Assembly: GCA_000320545.1 (NCBI GenBank)
Contig: ADNK01000981.1
Coordinates: 93,960 to 157,959, forward strand
Direction of reading: 5' to 3'
DNA: 64,000 nucleotides
From: Bigelowiella natans CCMP2755
Lineage: Eukaryota; Protista; Cercozoa
In this document: piece by piece, positions 34,223-50,135 of the stretch
Layout of the letters: the number at the start of each line of letters is the position of its first letter
How positions within the stretch are numbered: the stretch's first letter is position 1
Made by a program: the position numbers and the translations under genes
Notes under the pieces: model-generated
What the model saw: the letters and a program-made list of their open reading frames with translations, nothing else
Told to the model about the DNA's origin: nothing
Databases searched by the model: none

Positions 34223-35770
34223 GTGCATCATCGCTCCCCTCCGCGCTGCTGCTGATTGCAACACTGATTGATGCGCAGCTCACATTGCTCTGATGACCAG
34301 CTAGCCAGACCCAAAGCTGTCTAGCTGTGCCTGTCTCTCAGTCTCGTCGCGCACAGCTAGACAGGCTAGCAGGCAAACTGTCTTCGTTGCACATTCCGCG
34401 ATGCATAGAGCAGCGTGCCGCACAATGCACATCGTTGGCCACACCTGAATTTTCGGTGTGGTCGCATGCGCACTCCATGCTAGCACTTGCACCTCCATCA
34501 ATGTCGCGTTGCACCATTCTAGCATTGTGCATGCATGTGCACTTGCAGACACGCACCTTCTAGCCTTGCTAACTTGCTTGTGCTCATGCACAACCGTGCC
34601 TCTGGACCTGCTAGCCTGGCTTCTCTAGCTTCTGGGCTGTGCCAGCGTGTGTGGAATCCAGACACAGTGGATGATGCCTGTGTGTCTGACAGAATGTGCT
34701 GATCATTGTCAGCACTGATCAGTGTGCGCTAGTGCGGGTGACGTGCAGCAGCACTGTTGTTGACAGCATGACACAGCACAACAGCCCGGCGAAATCACAC
34801 TTGACCACACTAGCACACGCAGGCATCGCGGTGAATCCGCTGGCTAGCTGGCTAGCTGGGTCTGTATTGCAATTTGACACGAGGCATGCTGGTGCATGAG
34901 AACATGCGGTCACTCTGGCACTTTGTCTTGTGTTTTCCCGAACTGCAATTTCTGCTGAGTGAACGAAACATTGGAACATCGATGACAATTTGACGATCAA
35001 CACGATGCAAAGACAACAACCTGCTGCGTTGCTGACGCACAACACGCGCCTCAAGCAACGCAACACACGTACAGCACTTCAAGTGAGAACGGCGAAGCGA
35101 GGATTTGAAAGGCTGGCAGAAAACAGCGACAGCTAGACACAGGTTGGCCAACCAATGGCCAGCTGCCGAAGGTGCGCGTGAAGAGACTCTCACAAGAGGC
35201 ACGCAGAGAAAGATGATGAAGAAGAATGGAACGCGGTTGGAAGTTCTGATCAAGAAAAAAAGAAAGAAAGAAAGAAAGCCAGAAAGCAAAGAAACTTGGT
35301 GCGATCGACCACACCTGGACATTGCACTCTGGCACTTCCAATGAATGAAAGAAAGAAAGAGGGAAACTTGATGATGCACCACACTTCCAAAACGTCACAA
35401 GACACTTGCAAAGTGCGAACAATGAACAATGAACAATGAACAATGAACAATGAACAATGATGATGAACATTGAACATTGAACATTGAACAAAGCATTGAT
35501 GAACCACACTTCCAAAGTGTTGCAAGACACTCATTGCAGTGTGCGAAACGCAGCGAAACTCAGTGCCTCGAGTCAATGTGAACAATGAGAACAATGATGA
35601 AAAACTGCATTTCCAAAGTGTGACAAACTGCAGACACAATGCGTGTGATGTGCATTGCTAGATGCCACAAGACACTTGCAATGTTCAGGTGTGCGAAGTG
35701 CAGTGCCTCGAACTGGCTTCAGTGAGGACTGACCAGCAAACTAGCGGGGTTCATGCAAATTGGCACGAAC
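34190..35770. other. Strongly TpA-depleted intergenic zone
   Basis: Manual count: about 20 TA in ~1.6 kb, 16 of them in CTAG, and none in ~35137-35657. CpG is abundant. Confidence 0.9.
35417..35490. repeat. Heptamer minisatellite (AATGAAC)n/(ATTGAAC)n within a degenerate ~125-165 bp repeat
   Basis: aatgaac x5-6 followed by tgaacat x3. The flanking cacacttccaaa...caagacact...gtgcgaa...cagtgcctcg blocks recur at ~35373, ~35500 and ~35662. Confidence 0.85.
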
Positions 35771-36229
35771 CACTAAACATTGAACGCATCTATACATCAC
35801 AACTAGCAGCCAAATGACGACGATGCAAAGCATCCATCCTGAGCAGCAACACGGAGATCAAAGTTGGGGACAACCGAGGGGGCGAGTTTTGCGATATTTC
35901 ACTGCGACATGTGACAAGGAGCGAATCACGATGAAAATACATGGGATTTTGATGCTACGTCATTTGTTCTCATGGGTGACATTCTTTGGTGAATCTAGGT
36001 AAATTCCCTGCGATTCGGTCGATTTTGATGGTTAGTACCCGATTTTGGAACATCAGAACGCTCACTCTAGGAAGGGGGGAGGGGGATGATGATGATGTCC
36101 AAACTAATGACACCCTCTACGACTAAGAAGAGTACGGGACCGTGCTTCCCATTACAGCAGAAATCTTGAGGACGAATACGTATTGTTGTTGTCTACTACC
36201 ACGTGCATTTCCCAGCGGTTGGTTGTGTA

Positions 36230-38101
36230 ATGAAGTTCAATAAAAAGCTGCGAGAACACGTAAAGCAATCTCAGGCTGACGAGAGCTGGTACGTAGACTA
36301 CGCGACGCTGAAAGCAGCATGTAAGCAATGTTCTGAGGATGATTTTCGACAATTGTATATCCGAGAGGCGATGAAGTTTGTTGGATATCTTCGAAAGGGA
36401 CAGAAACTTGATCCCCTCTTTCTAGAGATCAATCTTACAGCCCTAGAGAAAGCGTGTAAGAAATTCGACAAATTCAACGGGTTGGAGAGGGTTCAAAGAA
36501 GTGAAATAGGGATTGATCTCAATGCATGTCCACAGAGATTCCAAGTTCGTTTACAACGTCACTTGGATTGCATGGGATATAGAGTAGAAACGGAAATCCA
36601 AACGATAAAGGAGCGCATCGAAATGATGTTTAACGATTTAAAAAGTACAGATGATGAACTATACATGAACGAAATCAGCATCAAGAGAGGACTTCAAAAG
36701 CTTGGTTTTCCATCCACTCCAGAAATAGCGGAGGAGTTGTTGCGGTCTGCAGACTACGATAGAGACGGGAAGGTGTCCTTCCGCGACTTCAAAGAGTATG
36801 TCTTAGCACGTGAGAGGAGAATACGCGAGTTATTCATGCACCTAGACAAGTCAAAAGATGGAAGTTTATCCATCTCTGACCTCAGGATAGCCTTAAAGAT
36901 GTCGGGAATTCATGCTGGGGAAGAGGAAGTGGCAGAGTTTATCCTTCGAACACACCAGAGGTTGGGATACGAGTACTCTATGCCATTGAATGATCGTATA
37001 GACTACACAACCTTTAGAGAATTATTAGTGCTAAGGCCTAGAATGGAAGGTGATACCGTAGTATCTTTGTTCGAATACTGGCAAAAGGCCGTGGACATAG
37101 ATTTCGCACCTGCAGATGAGTCTCCTTCCCTCTACCAGAAGAGCTTCCTTGAGACTTTCATAGCAGGGGGTGTGGCAGGTGCTGTATCTCGTACGTGCAC
37201 CGCACCTCTAGATCGCCTTAAACTTCTTCTTCAAACAGACACAGAGGGTAAATATAAGGGTATCGTACAGGGGATGAAAACCATTTACGAGGAGGGCAAA
37301 CAGCATCGCCTGAATACTGATCGTCGTGCAATCGGTACAGCTACTGGATGGAGGGGGGTTCTAGGAGGTCTCCTTGCTTTTTTCCGAGGCAATGGAACGA
37401 ATGTTGTTAAGATTGCTCCTGAGACTGCGATCAAATTTTGGGCGTATGAATCAACGAAAACAGTTTTCTGCAGAGAGGCTGAGAGTCCTACTGGTATAGA
37501 ACGATTCTTGTGCGGTGCTGCTGGTGGGATGACATCACAATCGTGCATATACCCTCTCGAAATCGTAAAGACAAGGCTTGCTGTATCCCAGGCAGGCACA
37601 TACAAAGGCATCACTCACTGTCTTTTCAAAATAACAAGAAAGGAGGGTTTTGGTGCACTCTATAAAGGCCTCACTGCTAGCATGTTAGGCATTATTCCAT
37701 ATTCGGGTGTTGATATGGCAGTTTACTTCACACTAAGAGACCGCTATAGAGGCTATACAGACGGACCGATAGGGATGATGACATGCGGGGCGATATCAAG
37801 CACCTGTGGGATGGTGTGTAGCTTTCCCTTACAGCTGATTCGAACAAGGCTGCAGGCCACAGGATTAGACGGTATGGTAAAGTACGATGGCATATGGCAC
37901 TGCTTCACATCAACGGTGCGGAAAGATGGTTTCTTCGGTCTGTACCGAGGATTCGGTCCTAACATGCTCAAGGCACTTCCAGCGATTTCCATTACCTATA
38001 CCGTCTATGAAACGGTGAAGAAGCGATTGGTAGAGTCAAGGACAACACAGCAGCGATTTCATCCCTCTTCTATGAATAACCAAGCTGGCAGCAGTAGATA
38101 G
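36230..38101 (+). CDS. SPX domain + EF-hand Ca2+-binding mitochondrial ATP-Mg/Pi carrier (SLC25A23/24/25, APC/SCaMC-like), intronless
   Basis: Single ORF. SPX hallmarks MKFNKKL, YVDYATLK and NLTALEKACKKFDK. EF-hands DYDRDGKVSFRDF and DKSKDGSLSISDL. Three carrier signatures PLDRLK, PLEIVKTR and PLQLIRTR, plus the APC-type FFRGNGTNVVKIAPETAIKFWAYE. Confidence 0.92.
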   Translation: MKFNKKLREHVKQSQADESWYVDYATLKAACKQCSEDDFRQLYIREAMKFVGYLRKGQKLDPLFLEINLTALEKACKKFDKFNGLERVQRSEIGIDLNACPQRFQVRLQRHLDCMGYRVETEIQTIKERIEMMFNDLKSTDDELYMNEISIKRGLQKLGFPSTPEIAEELLRSADYDRDGKVSFRDFKEYVLARERRIRELFMHLDKSKDGSLSISDLRIALKMSGIHAGEEEVAEFILRTHQRLGYEYSMPLNDRIDYTTFRELLVLRPRMEGDTVVSLFEYWQKAVDIDFAPADESPSLYQKSFLETFIAGGVAGAVSRTCTAPLDRLKLLLQTDTEGKYKGIVQGMKTIYEEGKQHRLNTDRRAIGTATGWRGVLGGLLAFFRGNGTNVVKIAPETAIKFWAYESTKTVFCREAESPTGIERFLCGAAGGMTSQSCIYPLEIVKTRLAVSQAGTYKGITHCLFKITRKEGFGALYKGLTASMLGIIPYSGVDMAVYFTLRDRYRGYTDGPIGMMTCGAISSTCGMVCSFPLQLIRTRLQATGLDGMVKYDGIWHCFTSTVRKDGFFGLYRGFGPNMLKALPAISITYTVYETVKKRLVESRTTQQRFHPSSMNNQAGSSR

Positions 38102-38199
38102 AAGTGGCGATTGATTTGATGTAATTAATATTCGTCGTGATTTTCAGAAAAGGAGAGGTGATTGTCGCGAGAACACATCTTTATTTGATTTTTCTGTTG

Positions 38200-39380
38200 A
38201 ATGATAATGCTAGCAACTAAAATGAGCGCAGTAGCAGCAGTACTGTGCACATAATAGACTCGCTAGCTCGCGTCTTGTATGTGCCGAATAGTTACTGTGC
38301 GATCGAACACTGCATGCAACACAACTGCGAGTCGTCGCGCTGTACGTACTAGTGCAGCCTAGCAGCGCTGGAGCGTAGCCTTCATCACCAGCAACGAGAC
38401 CTCTGTGCCGTGGCAGCTGCCAGCATGTCTAAATGTGTATAGCTAGCATGTCATGTCACATACGTTCAAGCCGCACTAGCGCAGCATGATAGCATTGCAA
38501 AGCTACATTAGGATGACAAGCAAGAAAAACTAACATTCACAGTTCTGGAGTTCACGCTGCTGCACTATTTTTATGGTCTAGATTTGTGCGAGCTAGCGAG
38601 ATCGACTGTACGTTGCAATGAAATGGTCATATTTTTTCAATAGTCATCCCACGTACATGTAGCCATATTTTTAAGCGAAGCTATATGTGTATGCACACTT
38701 CATCGCAGAAACTAAGCTACGTAATTTGAGCCACCACAACTAGCTAGCTACACATACTTCTCAAACTCTCTGTTCAGCATTACCATCATGTACGTACATG
38801 GACACGTCGTTGCATTTGTATATTTGCGACGCTGGGAACGTGGGTAGTTTCCTCCGTGCATTTGACAGGGCAATGCAACACTACGTGTAGCGATGCACGC
38901 TGCGACATGCATGAGTGTCATTCTCAAAGATGTAGATCATTTGTTCAAATCCAGAAATATCTCCAATGACACTAGAATGTGCTTCAACAACAAAATGGAC
39001 CAAGTGAACAGCACAGCTATCTAGCCACAGTCAACACGCTACCGGTGACATGCATCGCTAATTGGCATCGATTATACATGAGCGTAGTTGCACTCATTTG
39101 CGATAGGAACAACTATACATGCATGTGTCGTGCACATGCATGCATATCTAGCTAGCTAGGAATGGCTAACATAGCTGTATATTGAGAAATGTTAAGAGAT
39201 TTATGCACAAAGGGCTACATACATTTTACACACGCATCGGCTGCATGTAATGATATCTTTAGTAAATCCTAGCATGGTACGACTATGCATATGAATACTT
39301 CATACATATAAGTAAATAATCAAATTAGGCGCTGCACAGGCCTCTTAAGCGTGCATATCTAGATGTGTACATAAATTATT
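38200..39380. other. Partially TpA-depleted, CTAG-rich convergent intergenic zone
   Basis: Recurrent gctagc/ctagctag, tgca and catg. Depletion is weaker than at 34-35 kb. Confidence 0.5.
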
Positions 39381-47744: not shown

Positions 47745-50135
47745 TTAACGTGAATGCGGCGAGTAATGACGTGCAACACTTTTAGTACTCCTAGCATCCT
47801 GAGGACTAAAGAATCTGTTCCCCCGCCTTCTAGTTGCGCCTTTTGATAGATCCTTAAGAGTTGCTACGGCGTCATTTGTACCACTTGTTTTTGTGAGGAT
47901 AACGACTGACGGGTCTGTGGAATTGCTGGATCTGTTGTCCGAAATATCAAATATCTCCAACCTCTGCAAGTTTCTCAACTCAATGAGTGGTAGTTGCAAA
48001 ATGTCATTGCGAGGGAGGAGTAAATGCTTCAAAGATTGCAAGTCACCTATCTCAGGAGGAAGATGTTTAAGCTGATTGCAACCTAAATGAAGTGTTTCAA
48101 GGGCTTGAAGTTGTCCTATCATGGCTGGAAGGCTTAGAATCATGTTTCTCCTAAGCACAAGACACCTCATTGATCGCAAAAGTCCGATTTCCGGAGGCAA
48201 GGCCGTGAGCATGTTGCATTCGAGGTTCAAGGTTTCCAAAGCTATCAAAGTTCCAATTGACGACGGAATATCCCGCAACCGATTATTCCCTAGACGAAGA
48301 GTTTGAAGAGATTGCAATAATCTAATCGAACTGGGAACTCGCCTGAGGTTATTGCAGCTCAAATCCAAAAATTGAAGAGCTCCTGCATGCAGGGTTACAA
48401 GAGGAAATTTAGTTAATTTCTGTGCGGCTAAGCAAGCATGTTTCAATTGCTGCCATCTTTTCTCCACTTTCTCTGCCTTTGAGAGATATTCTTGTTCAAA
48501 TCGATCGCCCCAGGCCTTCCGCACAATAGACTCATGAAGAAACTTGGAAATTCCTTTTATATCCCTTGATAACGCCCTGTGCGCCCGAATTGATCGGATG
48601 CAATCGCCAGCAGCGTCAAGAAAACTAGTCTCCTTTTCTTCGTTGTCTTCATCCAATTCATCTTTGGTCAAACGTCGAGGCAGCGGTGTCTCTCCAGGAA
48701 GTGGCAAATGTTCTATTCTTCCAGGGGAATATTTGAGTCTGCGCAGAATCTCCTGGAGTTGTCTTTTCTTCCGAAATTGTTTTTTCTCTTTCAAAGTTTT
48801 ATTGTCGTTATGATCTACATACAATTTATCGAGTAGTCGCGCATCAAGTGTACTATTATCATCGCCATCTAATGTATCGAGTCTCCCATCACGTCTTCGG
48901 TGTTGGCTTGCATATGGAGCTGTGAAAAATTCGTGAGAGATAACTTCTGGAAGACTGAGACGATATTCTTCACTTGAGAGCATTGATGCAATTAGTGCTA
49001 TGCTAGCTCCAGATAGGTGTCTTACGTTGTATTGCTGCAGGAGTTGACGAAGCCCACACTCACCCGCTGAAACAAGAGCAAACCGACGGTCCGTATCACG
49101 GGGGCGATTATATGGCTCATTTCCCGTGAGGAGGAAGAACAATATGATGCCAGCAGAATATACATCAGCCAGAGGAGCAGTATAAGATATCTTTGCCATT
49201 GGAACTCGGCTTCTAAGCATTTCTGGTGGAGCGTAGGCCAATCTCATGGGCCTTCTTCCGCCGTTAAGGACTGATTTTATTCCAGGAACGAAATCAATCG
49301 CTCTGTGAAAGCTACCAAGTTTGGCAGTCATACTGCCATCTTCCTTTGCATTGCAGACAAGAACCGTCTCGAGAGCTAAGTTAAGGTGTGCAATCTTCTT
49401 TTCATGCATAGCGCTAAGTCCAGCCAGTATTTCACGGAATATCCCAGCAACCTCAGCTTCGCTTCCAACTTCATTCGTGTCGCTCCAAGATTTTGCCGAC
49501 CGGACGATGTCAGAGAGGTCTCCGTGTGTGGCGAACTCTTGAACGATCCAATAATCATTCGTTGATGTTGTGGATGAATACGAATGTCTACTTATTGAAG
49601 GACTGTTTCCTCCATTTCTGGACCCAATACTCCCAAAGCTACATGCAGAAGCGGTACTAGCAGAAGTAGAGTTCAAATCACTGTTTTCACCCACTAAGTC
49701 CACTCCTAGTCCTCCTTTTCTATCACTTTTGTGACTCGCAGAAGAACTGCTACTTTCCACTCCCATTTCTCCTACAGCAGACGAACTACTACTTTCAACT
49801 CCCATCTCTCCTACAAATCCTGAACCATAAAAGCGTATTAAGTTAGGGTGACACCTTTTCTCGTCATCACAAGCTAACTGGCGTAGTATTGATGCTTCGC
49901 GTGGGGGCCACCCTCCCTTTGAAGCCGTGTCTCTCTTCCGAACCTTAATAGCGACCACTTGCTGCTGCGACGAAGAAGATCCGCTATCATTTCTCCTTCT
50001 TCCAAGGTGGATTTCGCTGCTCGTCCCACTCTGCAGTTCCCTCACAGCAGTGAATCTCTCTGAAATATCTCCATCGAACATTGCTCTAGGATTCCATGGA
50101 TTGGAAATAAATGTTCTCTGAAGAAGTTTCTTCAA
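47745..50135 (-). CDS. Kinase-fold (probable pseudokinase) + C-terminal leucine-rich repeat protein, intronless
   Basis: 796-aa ORF, first ATG at 50081. Kinase elements VAIK, HPNLIRFY, WIVQEFATHGDL, YAPPE and ADVYSAGIILF are present, but HRD is HLN and DFG is SFH. About 7 LxxLxLxxNxLxxLP repeats. Confidence 0.85.
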   Translation of the reverse strand: MKKLLQRTFISNPWNPRAMFDGDISERFTAVRELQSGTSSEIHLGRRRNDSGSSSSQQQVVAIKVRKRDTASKGGWPPREASILRQLACDDEKRCHPNLIRFYGSGFVGEMGVESSSSSAVGEMGVESSSSSASHKSDRKGGLGVDLVGENSDLNSTSASTASACSFGSIGSRNGGNSPSISRHSYSSTTSTNDYWIVQEFATHGDLSDIVRSAKSWSDTNEVGSEAEVAGIFREILAGLSAMHEKKIAHLNLALETVLVCNAKEDGSMTAKLGSFHRAIDFVPGIKSVLNGGRRPMRLAYAPPEMLRSRVPMAKISYTAPLADVYSAGIILFFLLTGNEPYNRPRDTDRRFALVSAGECGLRQLLQQYNVRHLSGASIALIASMLSSEEYRLSLPEVISHEFFTAPYASQHRRRDGRLDTLDGDDNSTLDARLLDKLYVDHNDNKTLKEKKQFRKKRQLQEILRRLKYSPGRIEHLPLPGETPLPRRLTKDELDEDNEEKETSFLDAAGDCIRSIRAHRALSRDIKGISKFLHESIVRKAWGDRFEQEYLSKAEKVEKRWQQLKHACLAAQKLTKFPLVTLHAGALQFLDLSCNNLRRVPSSIRLLQSLQTLRLGNNRLRDIPSSIGTLIALETLNLECNMLTALPPEIGLLRSMRCLVLRRNMILSLPAMIGQLQALETLHLGCNQLKHLPPEIGDLQSLKHLLLPRNDILQLPLIELRNLQRLEIFDISDNRSSNSTDPSVVILTKTSGTNDAVATLKDLSKGATRRRGNRFFSPQDARSTKSVARHYSPHSR
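49739..49816 (-). repeat. In-frame 39-bp tandem duplication (VGEMGVESSSSSA x2) in the kinase domain
   Basis: The peptide is duplicated exactly while the two DNA copies differ at synonymous positions. Confidence 0.85.

What the first reader, a model, noticed from the sequence alone, without database searches (positions are those of the whole stretch)
36230..38101. SPX domain fused to a Ca2+-regulated mitochondrial ATP-Mg/Pi carrier
Seen: the N-terminal ~90 aa carry the SPX ligand-binding residues (MKF start, YxxLK phosphate-binding cluster, N-x-TA-xx-K-xx-KK-x-DK lysine cluster), followed by EF-hands and a complete APC/SCaMC-type SLC25 carrier. Established: SPX domains sense inositol pyrophosphates and phosphate status on XPR1/PHO1, VTC, Pho87/90, Pho81, SPX-MFS and SPX-RING proteins, whereas APC carriers are normally gated by EF-hands only. 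Inference: a dual-input (InsP7/InsP8 plus Ca2+) regulator of organellar adenine-nucleotide/phosphate exchange that links cellular P status directly to the mitochondrial ATP pool. I know of no characterised protein with this architecture. The SPX is unusually compact, with shortened middle helices.
Basis: partly seen in the sequence, partly recalled or inferred. Interest (0 to 1): 0.85.

Follow-up and report, generated by a model that had tools for sequence, protein, structure and literature searches.

The report
Compact SPX sensor fused to mitochondrial carrier
A chlorarachniophyte alga makes one protein that joins a shrunken phosphate-status sensor (SPX domain) and a calcium sensor to a mitochondrial ATP-Mg/phosphate carrier, and similar undescribed fusions occur in several distant protist groups, so cellular phosphate signalling may act directly on mitochondria.

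Summary
Window 36230-38101 (+) is one intronless, transcribed ORF of 623 aa.

- **SPX module (residues 1-88).** It is a real but trimmed SPX domain of four to five helices.
  - All six ligand residues defined in yeast Vtc4 are kept: Y24, K28, K78 and K74, K77, K81.
  - AlphaFold pLDDT is 89-97.
  - The four best matches among 48,161 PDB chains are all SPX domains (best Z 10.2, rmsd 1.9 Å over 82 residues, 30% identity).
  - Pfam SPX scores below threshold for this protein (15-20 bits against 27.8).
- **Rest of the protein.** A disordered linker follows, then an EF-hand domain like that of SCaMC-1. Only two of its four Ca2+ loops are canonical. The carrier is of the APC/SCaMC type.
- **Family.** An exhaustive profile search found 36 representatives of this compact SPX. 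Of the 20 that are 200 aa or longer, 17 carry Mito_carr, with or without EF-hands. Named sources are chlorarachniophytes, Picozoa, a choanoflagellate and Symbiodiniaceae. Sources call them only SCaMC, SLC25A2x or hypothetical.
- **Literature.** Eight library searches and three papers checked found no description of such a fusion.

Inositol-pyrophosphate sensing and gating of ATP-Mg/Pi exchange are inferred, not shown.

The parts
36075..38170 (+). Transcript of about 2.1 kb, unspliced
   Evidence: Three JGI transcript contigs, L001-L003, are collinear with 36075/36083-38168/38172 at 99.8-100% identity. Four runs from four studies each hold one contig from 36051-36091 to 38168-38272 with no joints. 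X7 carries an adapter remnant just before 36076. The runs are only guessed to be RNA.
36086..36169 (+). Upstream ORF of 27 codons in the 5' UTR, starting with four Met codons
   Evidence: Translation. It holds the only ATGs between the transcript start and 36230. It lies in frame with the main ORF but ends at TGA 36167-36169.
36230..38101 (+). Coding sequence, 623 aa plus TAG stop
   Evidence: It is 100% identical to database protein P0001.
36230..36493 (+). Compact SPX domain, residues 1-88. Helices 2-13, 24-33, 36-52, 54-60, 64-82. Ligand residues K2, Y24, K28, K74, K77, K78, K81.
   Evidence: pLDDT 89-97 in the full-length model. VIA wide search: 5ijp Z 10.2, 5iiq 9.1, 8i6v_E 8.9, 8tyu 7.7. 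Family profile against the PDB. Residue table.
36494..36550 (+). Flexible linker, residues 89-107
   Evidence: pLDDT below 50 for residues 90-107. The alignment is poorly conserved and varies in length here.
36551..37054 (+). EF-hand regulatory domain of SCaMC type, residues 108-275, entered by a long helix (102-137)
   Evidence: phmmer to the SCaMC-1 N-terminal domain: 4n5x 1.2e-12 and 4zcu 2e-12. Pfam EF-hand_7, EF-hand_1 and EF-hand_6.
36752..36787 (+). EF-hand 2 Ca2+ loop, residues 175-186, canonical
   Evidence: Pattern scan.
36845..36880 (+). EF-hand 3 Ca2+ loop, residues 206-217, canonical
   Evidence: Pattern scan. The EF1 and EF4 loops do not fit the pattern.
37055..37090 (+). Amphipathic helix between the EF-hands and the carrier, residues 276-287, with W284 invariant
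   Evidence: Helix 276-287 in the model. W284 is invariant in the 36-sequence alignment A4. Its role as the APC self-sequestered helix is inferred from established SCaMC-1 structures.
37124..38059 (+). SLC25 carrier domain, residues 299-610, six transmembrane helices in three repeats
   Evidence: Mito_carr 4.9e-67. Signature motifs start at P326, P442 and P533, and the cytoplasmic-side motifs at Y406, Y499 and Y593. 76 of the 86 columns that are at least 90% conserved in SCaMC are kept. pLDDT is mostly 90-97.

Best explanation
**What is shown.** The gene encodes an inner-membrane carrier of the ATP-Mg/Pi (APC/SCaMC, SLC25A23/24/25) type. Its regulatory arm carries two sensor modules in series:
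- a trimmed 88-residue SPX domain at the extreme N-terminus;
- a disordered linker of about 20 residues;
- an EF-hand domain plus an amphipathic helix, as in SCaMC-1.

Also shown are the domain identities, the full set of six SPX ligand residues, transcription of the whole ORF, and membership of a wider compact-SPX carrier family.

**What is inferred.**
- As in other APCs, the N-terminal arm faces the intermembrane space.
- Small cytosolic molecules reach that space through outer-membrane porins.
- The basic face of the SPX (K2, Y24, K28, K74, K77, K78, K81) binds inositol pyrophosphates (InsP7 or InsP8, more weakly InsP6 or Pi) that report cellular phosphate status.
- Ligand binding changes how the regulatory arm sits on the carrier.
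- Net exchange of ATP-Mg for phosphate then depends on both phosphate status and Ca2+.
- Relatives in which the SPX sits directly on the carrier without EF-hands suggest the SPX can act as a regulatory module on its own.
For: **SPX identity**
- The motifs and spacing match the PBC and KSC residues of ScVtc4.
- The structure-based search puts four SPX domains on top, with 22-30% identity and rmsd 1.9-2.3 Å. Unrelated helical rows below them show 13% identity or less.
- The family profile hits SPX structures almost exclusively.
- Five relatives pass Pfam's SPX threshold: P0128 36.2, P0135 34.7, P0130 31.7, P0134 28.6 and P0124 28.1 bits.

**Ligand residues conserved across distant lineages**
- Y24 is kept in 26 of 26 members, K78 in 23 and K28 in 22 (plus one R).
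- All six residues are kept in 16 of 26.

**Carrier type**
- After the orthologues, the best named hits are SCaMC and SLC25A24/25 at 35-43% identity.
- The EF domain matches the SCaMC-1 N-terminal domain at 1e-12, against about 1e-5 for calmodulin.
- 76 of 86 SCaMC-conserved columns are kept.
- The clade of SPX-EF-carriers (SH-aLRT 95) nests among SCaMCs.

**One gene, one transcript**.

**Ligand pathway plausible in this genome**
- An IPK-family kinase is present (162 bits).
- There is a PPIP5K N-domain exon match.
- At least six canonical SPX exon matches occur.
Against: - Pfam SPX is below threshold for this protein, and Foldseek alone gave only E 0.3.
- Helices alpha5 and alpha6 and half of the alpha3/alpha4 hairpin of canonical SPX are missing. 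No SPX this small has been shown to bind ligand.
- Three relatives have lost several ligand residues, so the domain can persist without them: the Amorphochlora protein P0004, the paralogue without EF-hands P0007, and P0133.
- EF1 and EF4 loops are non-canonical, so the Ca2+ response may differ from that of SCaMC-1.
- Localisation, substrate, ligand binding and any coupling between SPX and transport are all untested.
- The PPIP5K evidence is a single exon fragment below the Pfam cutoff.
Confidence: 0.6

Rival explanations
1. The N-terminal module descends from SPX but no longer senses a ligand. It would serve as a helical scaffold, for example for dimerisation, docking of a partner protein or stabilising the EF-hand arm. 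The carrier would then be regulated by Ca2+ alone.
For: The domain lacks alpha5 and alpha6 and is far shorter than any SPX with shown ligand binding. P0004, P0007 and P0133 keep the fold-defining residues (Y24, N68) but lose most of the lysines, so the fold is retained without the basic site in some lineages.
Against: In this protein, and in 16 of 26 family members from very distant lineages, all six surface ligand residues are kept. Solvent-exposed lysines are rarely conserved that way without a function. The parts that were trimmed away lie outside the aligned N-terminus, alpha2 and C-terminal alpha4 segments that carry the ligand residues.
Confidence: 0.22
2. The protein is an SPX-regulated carrier, but not a mitochondrial ATP-Mg/Pi exchanger. 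It might sit in another membrane (peroxisome or the complex plastid envelope) or carry another phosphorylated substrate.
For: No localisation or transport data exist. The matrix loop of repeat 1 has an insertion of about 15 residues (around residues 357-372) that is absent from the ADP/ATP carrier aligned. One relative, P0136, joins the compact SPX to a carrier that keeps only 27 of 97 SCaMC-conserved columns and looks UCP-like by eye. So the SPX module is not tied to one carrier subtype.
Against: 76 of 86 SCaMC-conserved carrier positions are kept, and the clade nests among SCaMC sequences. The EF-hand arm and amphipathic helix typical of APCs are present.
Confidence: 0.13
3. The SPX resemblance is chance similarity of a lysine-rich helical bundle, or the fusion is an artefact of assembly or gene calling.
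For: Pfam is sub-threshold and Foldseek gave E 0.3. Middling Z-scores are common for helical bundles (note).
Against: Three independent lines point only to SPX. A single uninterrupted ORF is covered end to end by contigs from four studies and by three transcriptome assemblies. The same fusion is seen in complete transcripts of other species: P0002, P0003, P0124 and P0185.
Confidence: 0.03

Closest known systems
APC/SCaMC carriers (human SLC25A23/24/25, yeast Sal1, Arabidopsis APC1-3)
   Same: Both have an N-terminal EF-hand regulatory domain, an amphipathic helix and a three-repeat SLC25 carrier. Identity to named SCaMCs is 35-43%. 76 of 86 conserved positions are kept, and the clade nests phylogenetically among SCaMCs.
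   Different: This protein carries an extra 88-residue SPX module and a linker ahead of the EF-hands. Only two of its four Ca2+ loops are canonical. It has an insertion in the first matrix loop.
SPX-gated transporters: XPR1/PHO1 (SPX-EXS), Pho87/Pho90/Pho91 (SPX-SLC13), VPT1/PHT5 (SPX-MFS)
   Same: An N-terminal SPX starting with MKF sits directly on a phosphate-handling membrane transporter, with the PBC and KSC basic residues conserved.
   Different: The transporter here is an SLC25 mitochondrial carrier, a partner that no paper found in the library search reports. The SPX is about half the usual length and lacks alpha5 and alpha6. A second sensor (EF-hands) lies between the SPX and the transporter.
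SPX domain of Vtc4 (Chaetomium 5ijp, yeast 5iiq and 8i6v)
   Same: These are the best structural matches (Z 10.2, 9.1 and 8.9; 22-30% identity) and show the same ligand-residue spacing.
   Different: In Vtc4 the SPX regulates a polyphosphate polymerase and has full-length alpha3 and alpha4 plus alpha5 and alpha6.

Membership tests
SPX domain (Pfam PF03105) | Score at or above Pfam's gathering threshold (27.8 bits) | tested here: not met
   15.3 bits on the whole protein and 20.5 bits on residues 1-135. Five relatives in the same compact family do pass, at 28.1-36.2 bits.
SPX domain (Pfam PF03105) | Phosphate-binding cluster (Tyr and Lys on alpha2, Lys on alpha4; ScVtc4 Y22, K26, K133) | tested here: met
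   Y24, K28 and K78 are present.
SPX domain (Pfam PF03105) | Lysine surface cluster on alpha4 (ScVtc4 K129, K132, K136) | tested here: met
   K74, K77 and K81 have identical spacing.
SPX domain (Pfam PF03105) | SPX fold: N-terminal helical hairpin, long alpha3/alpha4 core and C-terminal alpha5/alpha6 | tested here: inconclusive
   Helices alpha1 to alpha4 superpose on SPX structures (Z 10.2, rmsd 1.9 Å over 82 residues). Alpha3 and alpha4 are shortened, and no alpha5 or alpha6 equivalent is seen. Residues 90-107 are disordered.
SPX domain (Pfam PF03105) | Binding of InsP6 or PP-InsP | not testable with these tools
   This needs ITC or MST with the recombinant domain.
ATP-Mg/Pi carrier (APC/SCaMC, SLC25A23/24/25) | Three Mito_carr repeats with P-x-[DE]-x-x-[KR]-type signatures | tested here: met
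   Mito_carr 4.9e-67. Signature motifs start at P326, P442 and P533. The third has Q, as in the consensus of alignment A4 (SCaMC references plus SPX-EF-carriers).
ATP-Mg/Pi carrier (APC/SCaMC, SLC25A23/24/25) | N-terminal domain with four Ca2+-binding EF-hands | tested here: inconclusive
   The domain is homologous to the SCaMC-1 N-terminal domain (1.2e-12). Only the EF2 and EF3 loops are canonical.
ATP-Mg/Pi carrier (APC/SCaMC, SLC25A23/24/25) | Groups with SCaMC sequences in a carrier-domain tree and keeps their conserved residues | tested here: met
   The SPX-EF-carrier clade (SH-aLRT 95) is sister to protist SCaMCs (support 85). 76 of 86 conserved columns are kept. No other SLC25 subfamilies were included as outgroups, apart from P0136.
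ATP-Mg/Pi carrier (APC/SCaMC, SLC25A23/24/25) | Ca2+-stimulated ATP-Mg/Pi counter-exchange in the mitochondrial inner membrane | not testable with these tools
   This needs proteoliposome transport assays and localisation.

The most novel reading that the evidence does not exclude
The compact SPX is a general inositol-pyrophosphate-sensing regulatory module for SLC25 carriers. It would have been acquired once and early, because a single origin among APC-like carriers is not rejected (p-AU 0.54). It is retained in Rhizaria, Alveolata, Picozoa and choanoflagellates. If so, it would be the first direct molecular link between the SPX/PP-InsP phosphate-signalling pathway and mitochondrial adenylate and phosphate exchange. 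It would also define the minimal ligand-binding core of an SPX domain, at about 85 residues.
Probability: 0.45. Interest if true: 0.9.

Novelty: new variant of a known kind. Interest (0 to 1): 0.78.

Why it matters
SPX domains are the eukaryotic receptors for inositol pyrophosphates. They control phosphate uptake, export, vacuolar storage and polyphosphate synthesis. A review of this signalling pathway states that the impact of mitochondria and other organelles on cytosolic phosphate homeostasis is essentially unaddressed (PMC7381174).

An SPX wired to an ATP-Mg/Pi carrier would give a concrete, testable route by which cellular phosphate status sets the mitochondrial adenine-nucleotide pool. 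The organisms that carry it are marine protists; from my own knowledge, not tested here, such waters are often phosphate-poor.

The 88-residue domain would also be the smallest natural SPX. That makes it useful for defining the minimal ligand-binding core and as a compact biosensor scaffold.

The family also shows that routine Pfam-based surveys miss SPX proteins. This protein scores below threshold, and the 2025 dinoflagellate survey did not list carrier fusions.

Tried and rejected
- **Foldseek against the PDB.** An SPX domain ranked first, but only at E 0.3, which is not convincing alone. The VIA wide search was needed.
- **ESM Atlas look-alikes for residues 1-100.** Only generic helical bacterial clusters came up (TM 0.38-0.52), so this was uninformative.
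- **The search for homologous proteins restricted to residues 1-100.** It returned only the protein itself and two orthologues, which is a word-index limit and not evidence of rarity.
- **Seven-sequence N-terminal profile against the PDB.** The result was non-significant, with the best hit a J-domain at E 0.39. The 26-sequence profile resolved it.
- **Pfam CDH hit (PF02611, 15.7-16.8 bits).** It falls on residues 87-137, which overlap the low-confidence stretch 90-107, is below the cutoff, and appears in one member only. I judged it spurious.
- **The search of earlier findings by place and by word.** Nothing was on record.
- **Gene fusion or assembly artefact.** I rejected this on the transcript evidence.
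- **Reading runs.** They are contigs and only guessed to be RNA, so they cannot give expression level or a mapped 5' end.
Full report
**1. What is at the coordinates**

Window 36230-38101 (+) is a single uninterrupted ORF of 623 codons from the ATG, or 632 from an upstream GTG. Orthologues P0002, P0003 and P0005 also begin with MK, so 36230 is the likely start.

Transcript evidence covers the whole ORF:
- Three transcriptome contigs, L001-L003, are collinear with 36075/36083-38168/38172 at 99.8-100% identity.
- Four sequencing runs from four studies each hold one contig spanning 36051-36091 to 38168-38272 without any joint.
- One of these contigs has an adapter remnant immediately before 36076.

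The contigs stop at the gene's edges rather than running into the flanks. That fits RNA, although the runs are only guessed to be RNA.

The SPX-coding 5' part is therefore in the mature message, and the gene has no introns. The 5' UTR of about 155 nt holds a 27-codon upstream ORF at 36086-36169.

The closest relatives are chlorarachniophyte proteins: an MMETSP transcript at 75% identity, Lotharella globosa at 65% and Amorphochlora amoebiformis at 61%. The genome is 91.4 Mb in 3,736 contigs.

**2. The carrier and the EF-hands**

- Pfam gives Mito_carr at 4.9e-67 and several EF-hand families.
- The carrier part matches the ADP/ATP carrier structures at about 1e-28.
- Residues 129-294 match the N-terminal regulatory domain of human SCaMC-1 (4n5x 1.2e-12, 4zcu 2e-12). 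That is far better than the calmodulin match at about 1e-5.
- Outside the orthologue group, the best named hits are SCaMC-1/2/3 and SLC25A23/24/25 at 35-43% identity.
- Of the 86 carrier columns that are at least 90% conserved among 30 SCaMC references, the window protein keeps 76. Most of the changes are conservative.
- The three signature motifs (starting at P326, P442 and P533) and the cytoplasmic-side motifs are present.
- Only two Ca2+ loops (175-186 and 206-217) fit the canonical pattern; EF1 and EF4 do not.
- The helix between the EF-hands and the carrier (276-287) contains W284, which is invariant in alignment A4.
- From established work on SCaMC-1, that helix is the amphipathic element captured by the Ca2+-bound EF-hands. 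Its role here is inferred.

**3. The N-terminal module is a trimmed SPX domain**

Sequence evidence:
- Pfam SPX is below threshold for this protein (15.3 and 20.5 bits against 27.8). It matches only residues 64-85, the helix carrying the lysine motif.
- PMC9911596 defines the ScVtc4 ligand residues as a phosphate-binding cluster (PBC: Y22, K26, K133) and a lysine surface cluster (KSC: K129, K132, K136).
- The window protein has Y24, K28 and K78, and K74, K77 and K81, with identical spacing, plus the N-terminal MKF.

Structure evidence:
- AlphaFold2 models residues 1-88 with pLDDT 83-94 from a 7-sequence alignment and 89-97 in the full-length model.
- Foldseek put an SPX domain first, but only at E 0.3.
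- The search independent of Foldseek, over 48,161 PDB chains, ranked four SPX domains first:

| Chain | Protein | Z | Detail |
|---|---|---|---|
| 5ijp | CtVtc4 | 10.2 | rmsd 1.9 Å, 82 residues, 30% identity |
| 5iiq | ScVtc4 | 9.1 | |
| 8i6v_E | VTC complex chain | 8.9 | |
| 8tyu | XPR1 | 7.7 | |

- Across these four rows identity is 22-30% and rmsd 1.9-2.3 Å. Unrelated helical proteins follow at Z 7.3 and below, with 13% identity or less.
- Model residues 1-84 map onto residues 1-153 of 5ijp. So roughly half of the alpha3/alpha4 hairpin is missing and nothing corresponds to alpha5 and alpha6.
- Residues 90-107 are disordered, and a long helix (102-137) leads into EF-hand 1.
The domain is best described as a minimal SPX core.

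**4. It belongs to an unrecognised family**

An exhaustive HMMER search of 1.84 billion representative proteins with the N-terminal profile gave 36 hits at E 0.001 or better.

- Of the 20 representatives that are 200 aa or longer, 17 carry Mito_carr, some with EF-hands and some without. The other three are P0123, a garbled fragment, and P0140 and P0141 (see below).
- Five pass Pfam's SPX threshold: P0128, P0135, P0130, P0134 and P0124.
- A 26-member alignment of the module has Y24 and N68 invariant. The lysine positions are 65-88% Lys (K74 17, K77 22, K78 23 and K81 22 of 26), and 16 of 26 members keep all six ligand residues.
- That profile hits SPX structures almost exclusively in the PDB: 5ijj 1.7e-4, 5ijp 5.7e-4, rice SPX1 8.9e-4, then XPR1, PHO1, SYG1, VTC4 and PHO90.
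- Named sources are Picozoa, the choanoflagellate Diaphanoeca grandis, Symbiodinium and Durusdinium, besides the chlorarachniophytes. Many members come from marine metagenomes or metatranscriptomes.
- Sources name them SCaMC, SLC25A23/24/25 or hypothetical. One 104-aa fragment was auto-named an SPX protein.

**5. Phylogeny of the carrier part**

- In a tree of 50 carrier domains, the SPX-EF-carriers form one clade of 12 (SH-aLRT 95). This clade includes the window protein and is sister to a group of protist SCaMCs (support 85).
- The carriers with SPX but no EF-hands form a second, long-branched clade of 7 (support 100).
- Constraining all 19 APC-like SPX carriers to one clade is not rejected; the constrained tree is marginally better (p-AU 0.54). 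A single ancient fusion is therefore possible but not shown.
- P0136 joins the same compact SPX to a carrier that keeps only 27 of 97 SCaMC-conserved columns and looks UCP-like by eye.
- P0141 joins it to a multi-pass membrane domain with a faint PHO4 resemblance (E 0.021).
- No other SLC25 subfamilies were available as outgroups.

**6. Context in the genome**

- The compact-SPX profile finds only this gene in the assembly.
- The Pfam SPX model finds at least six other exon-level matches, which are canonical SPX genes.
- An IPK-family inositol phosphate kinase is present (162 bits).
- One exon fragment resembles the PPIP5K N-domain (30.8 bits, below the cutoff).
- A PP-InsP system is therefore plausible but not proven.

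**7. How it most likely works**

- Shown: the architecture and the conserved ligand site.
- From established knowledge of APC carriers, the N-terminal arm faces the intermembrane space. Small cytosolic solutes reach that space through outer-membrane porins.
- I infer that the basic face of the SPX binds PP-InsPs that report phosphate sufficiency. Occupancy would alter how the regulatory arm engages the carrier.
- Net ATP-Mg/Pi exchange, and thus the size of the matrix adenylate pool, would then depend on both phosphate status and Ca2+.
- Relatives with the SPX placed directly on the carrier argue that the SPX is a regulatory module in its own right and not an appendage of the EF-hands.
- The sign of the effect, activation or inhibition, cannot be predicted from the sequence.

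**8. Against the sensing hypothesis**

- The domain is smaller than any SPX with shown ligand binding.
- Three relatives (P0004, P0007, P0133) have lost several ligand residues.
- P0007, which lacks EF-hands, ends in an odd C-terminus and may derive from an aberrant transcript.

**9. Novelty**

- Eight searches of the paper library were run. Those combining SPX with mitochondrial carrier, Mito_carr, SCaMC, SLC25, Bigelowiella, protists or dinoflagellates found no description of such a fusion.
- The library does not cover subscription journals, and I could not query InterPro architectures.
- I class the finding as a new variant of a known kind, namely SPX-gated transporters and APC carriers.

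**10. Verdict**

The architectural interpretation is supported. The function is plausible but untested.

Noticed in passing
window 36086-36169 (+): There is a 27-codon upstream ORF in the 5' UTR of the carrier gene. It begins with four consecutive Met codons, lies in frame with the main ORF and ends at a TGA. It could regulate translation.
   Followed up: partly
window 36230-38101: The 1.9-kb coding sequence has no introns. From my own knowledge, chlorarachniophyte nuclear genes are usually intron-rich, and other SPX matches in this genome are exon fragments. An intronless gene may point to retroposition or recent acquisition.
   Followed up: no
protein P0141 (metagenomic, 391 aa): The same compact SPX is fused to a multi-pass membrane domain that is not a mitochondrial carrier. 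That domain has a faint PHO4/PiT phosphate-transporter resemblance (E 0.021, 14 bits).
   Followed up: partly
protein P0136 (315 aa): A compact SPX is fused to a carrier that keeps only 27 of 97 SCaMC-conserved columns and looks UCP- or dicarboxylate-like by eye. So the module is not restricted to APC-type carriers.
   Followed up: partly
protein P0007 / locus L004:197-1615: This chlorarachniophyte relative has the N-terminal module joined directly to the carrier with no EF-hands. Its ligand residues are degenerate and its C-terminus is odd. It may be a paralogue or an aberrantly spliced transcript.
   Followed up: partly
window 47748-50135 (-): A long ORF of 796 aa combines a protein kinase domain with leucine-rich repeats (Pkinase 4e-20, LRR_8 9.6e-22).
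   Followed up: no
window 35252-35491: Microsatellites lie upstream of the gene, (AAGA)n at 35252-35294 and (GAACAAT)n at 35417-35491, within a stretch of strong AT skew.
   Followed up: no
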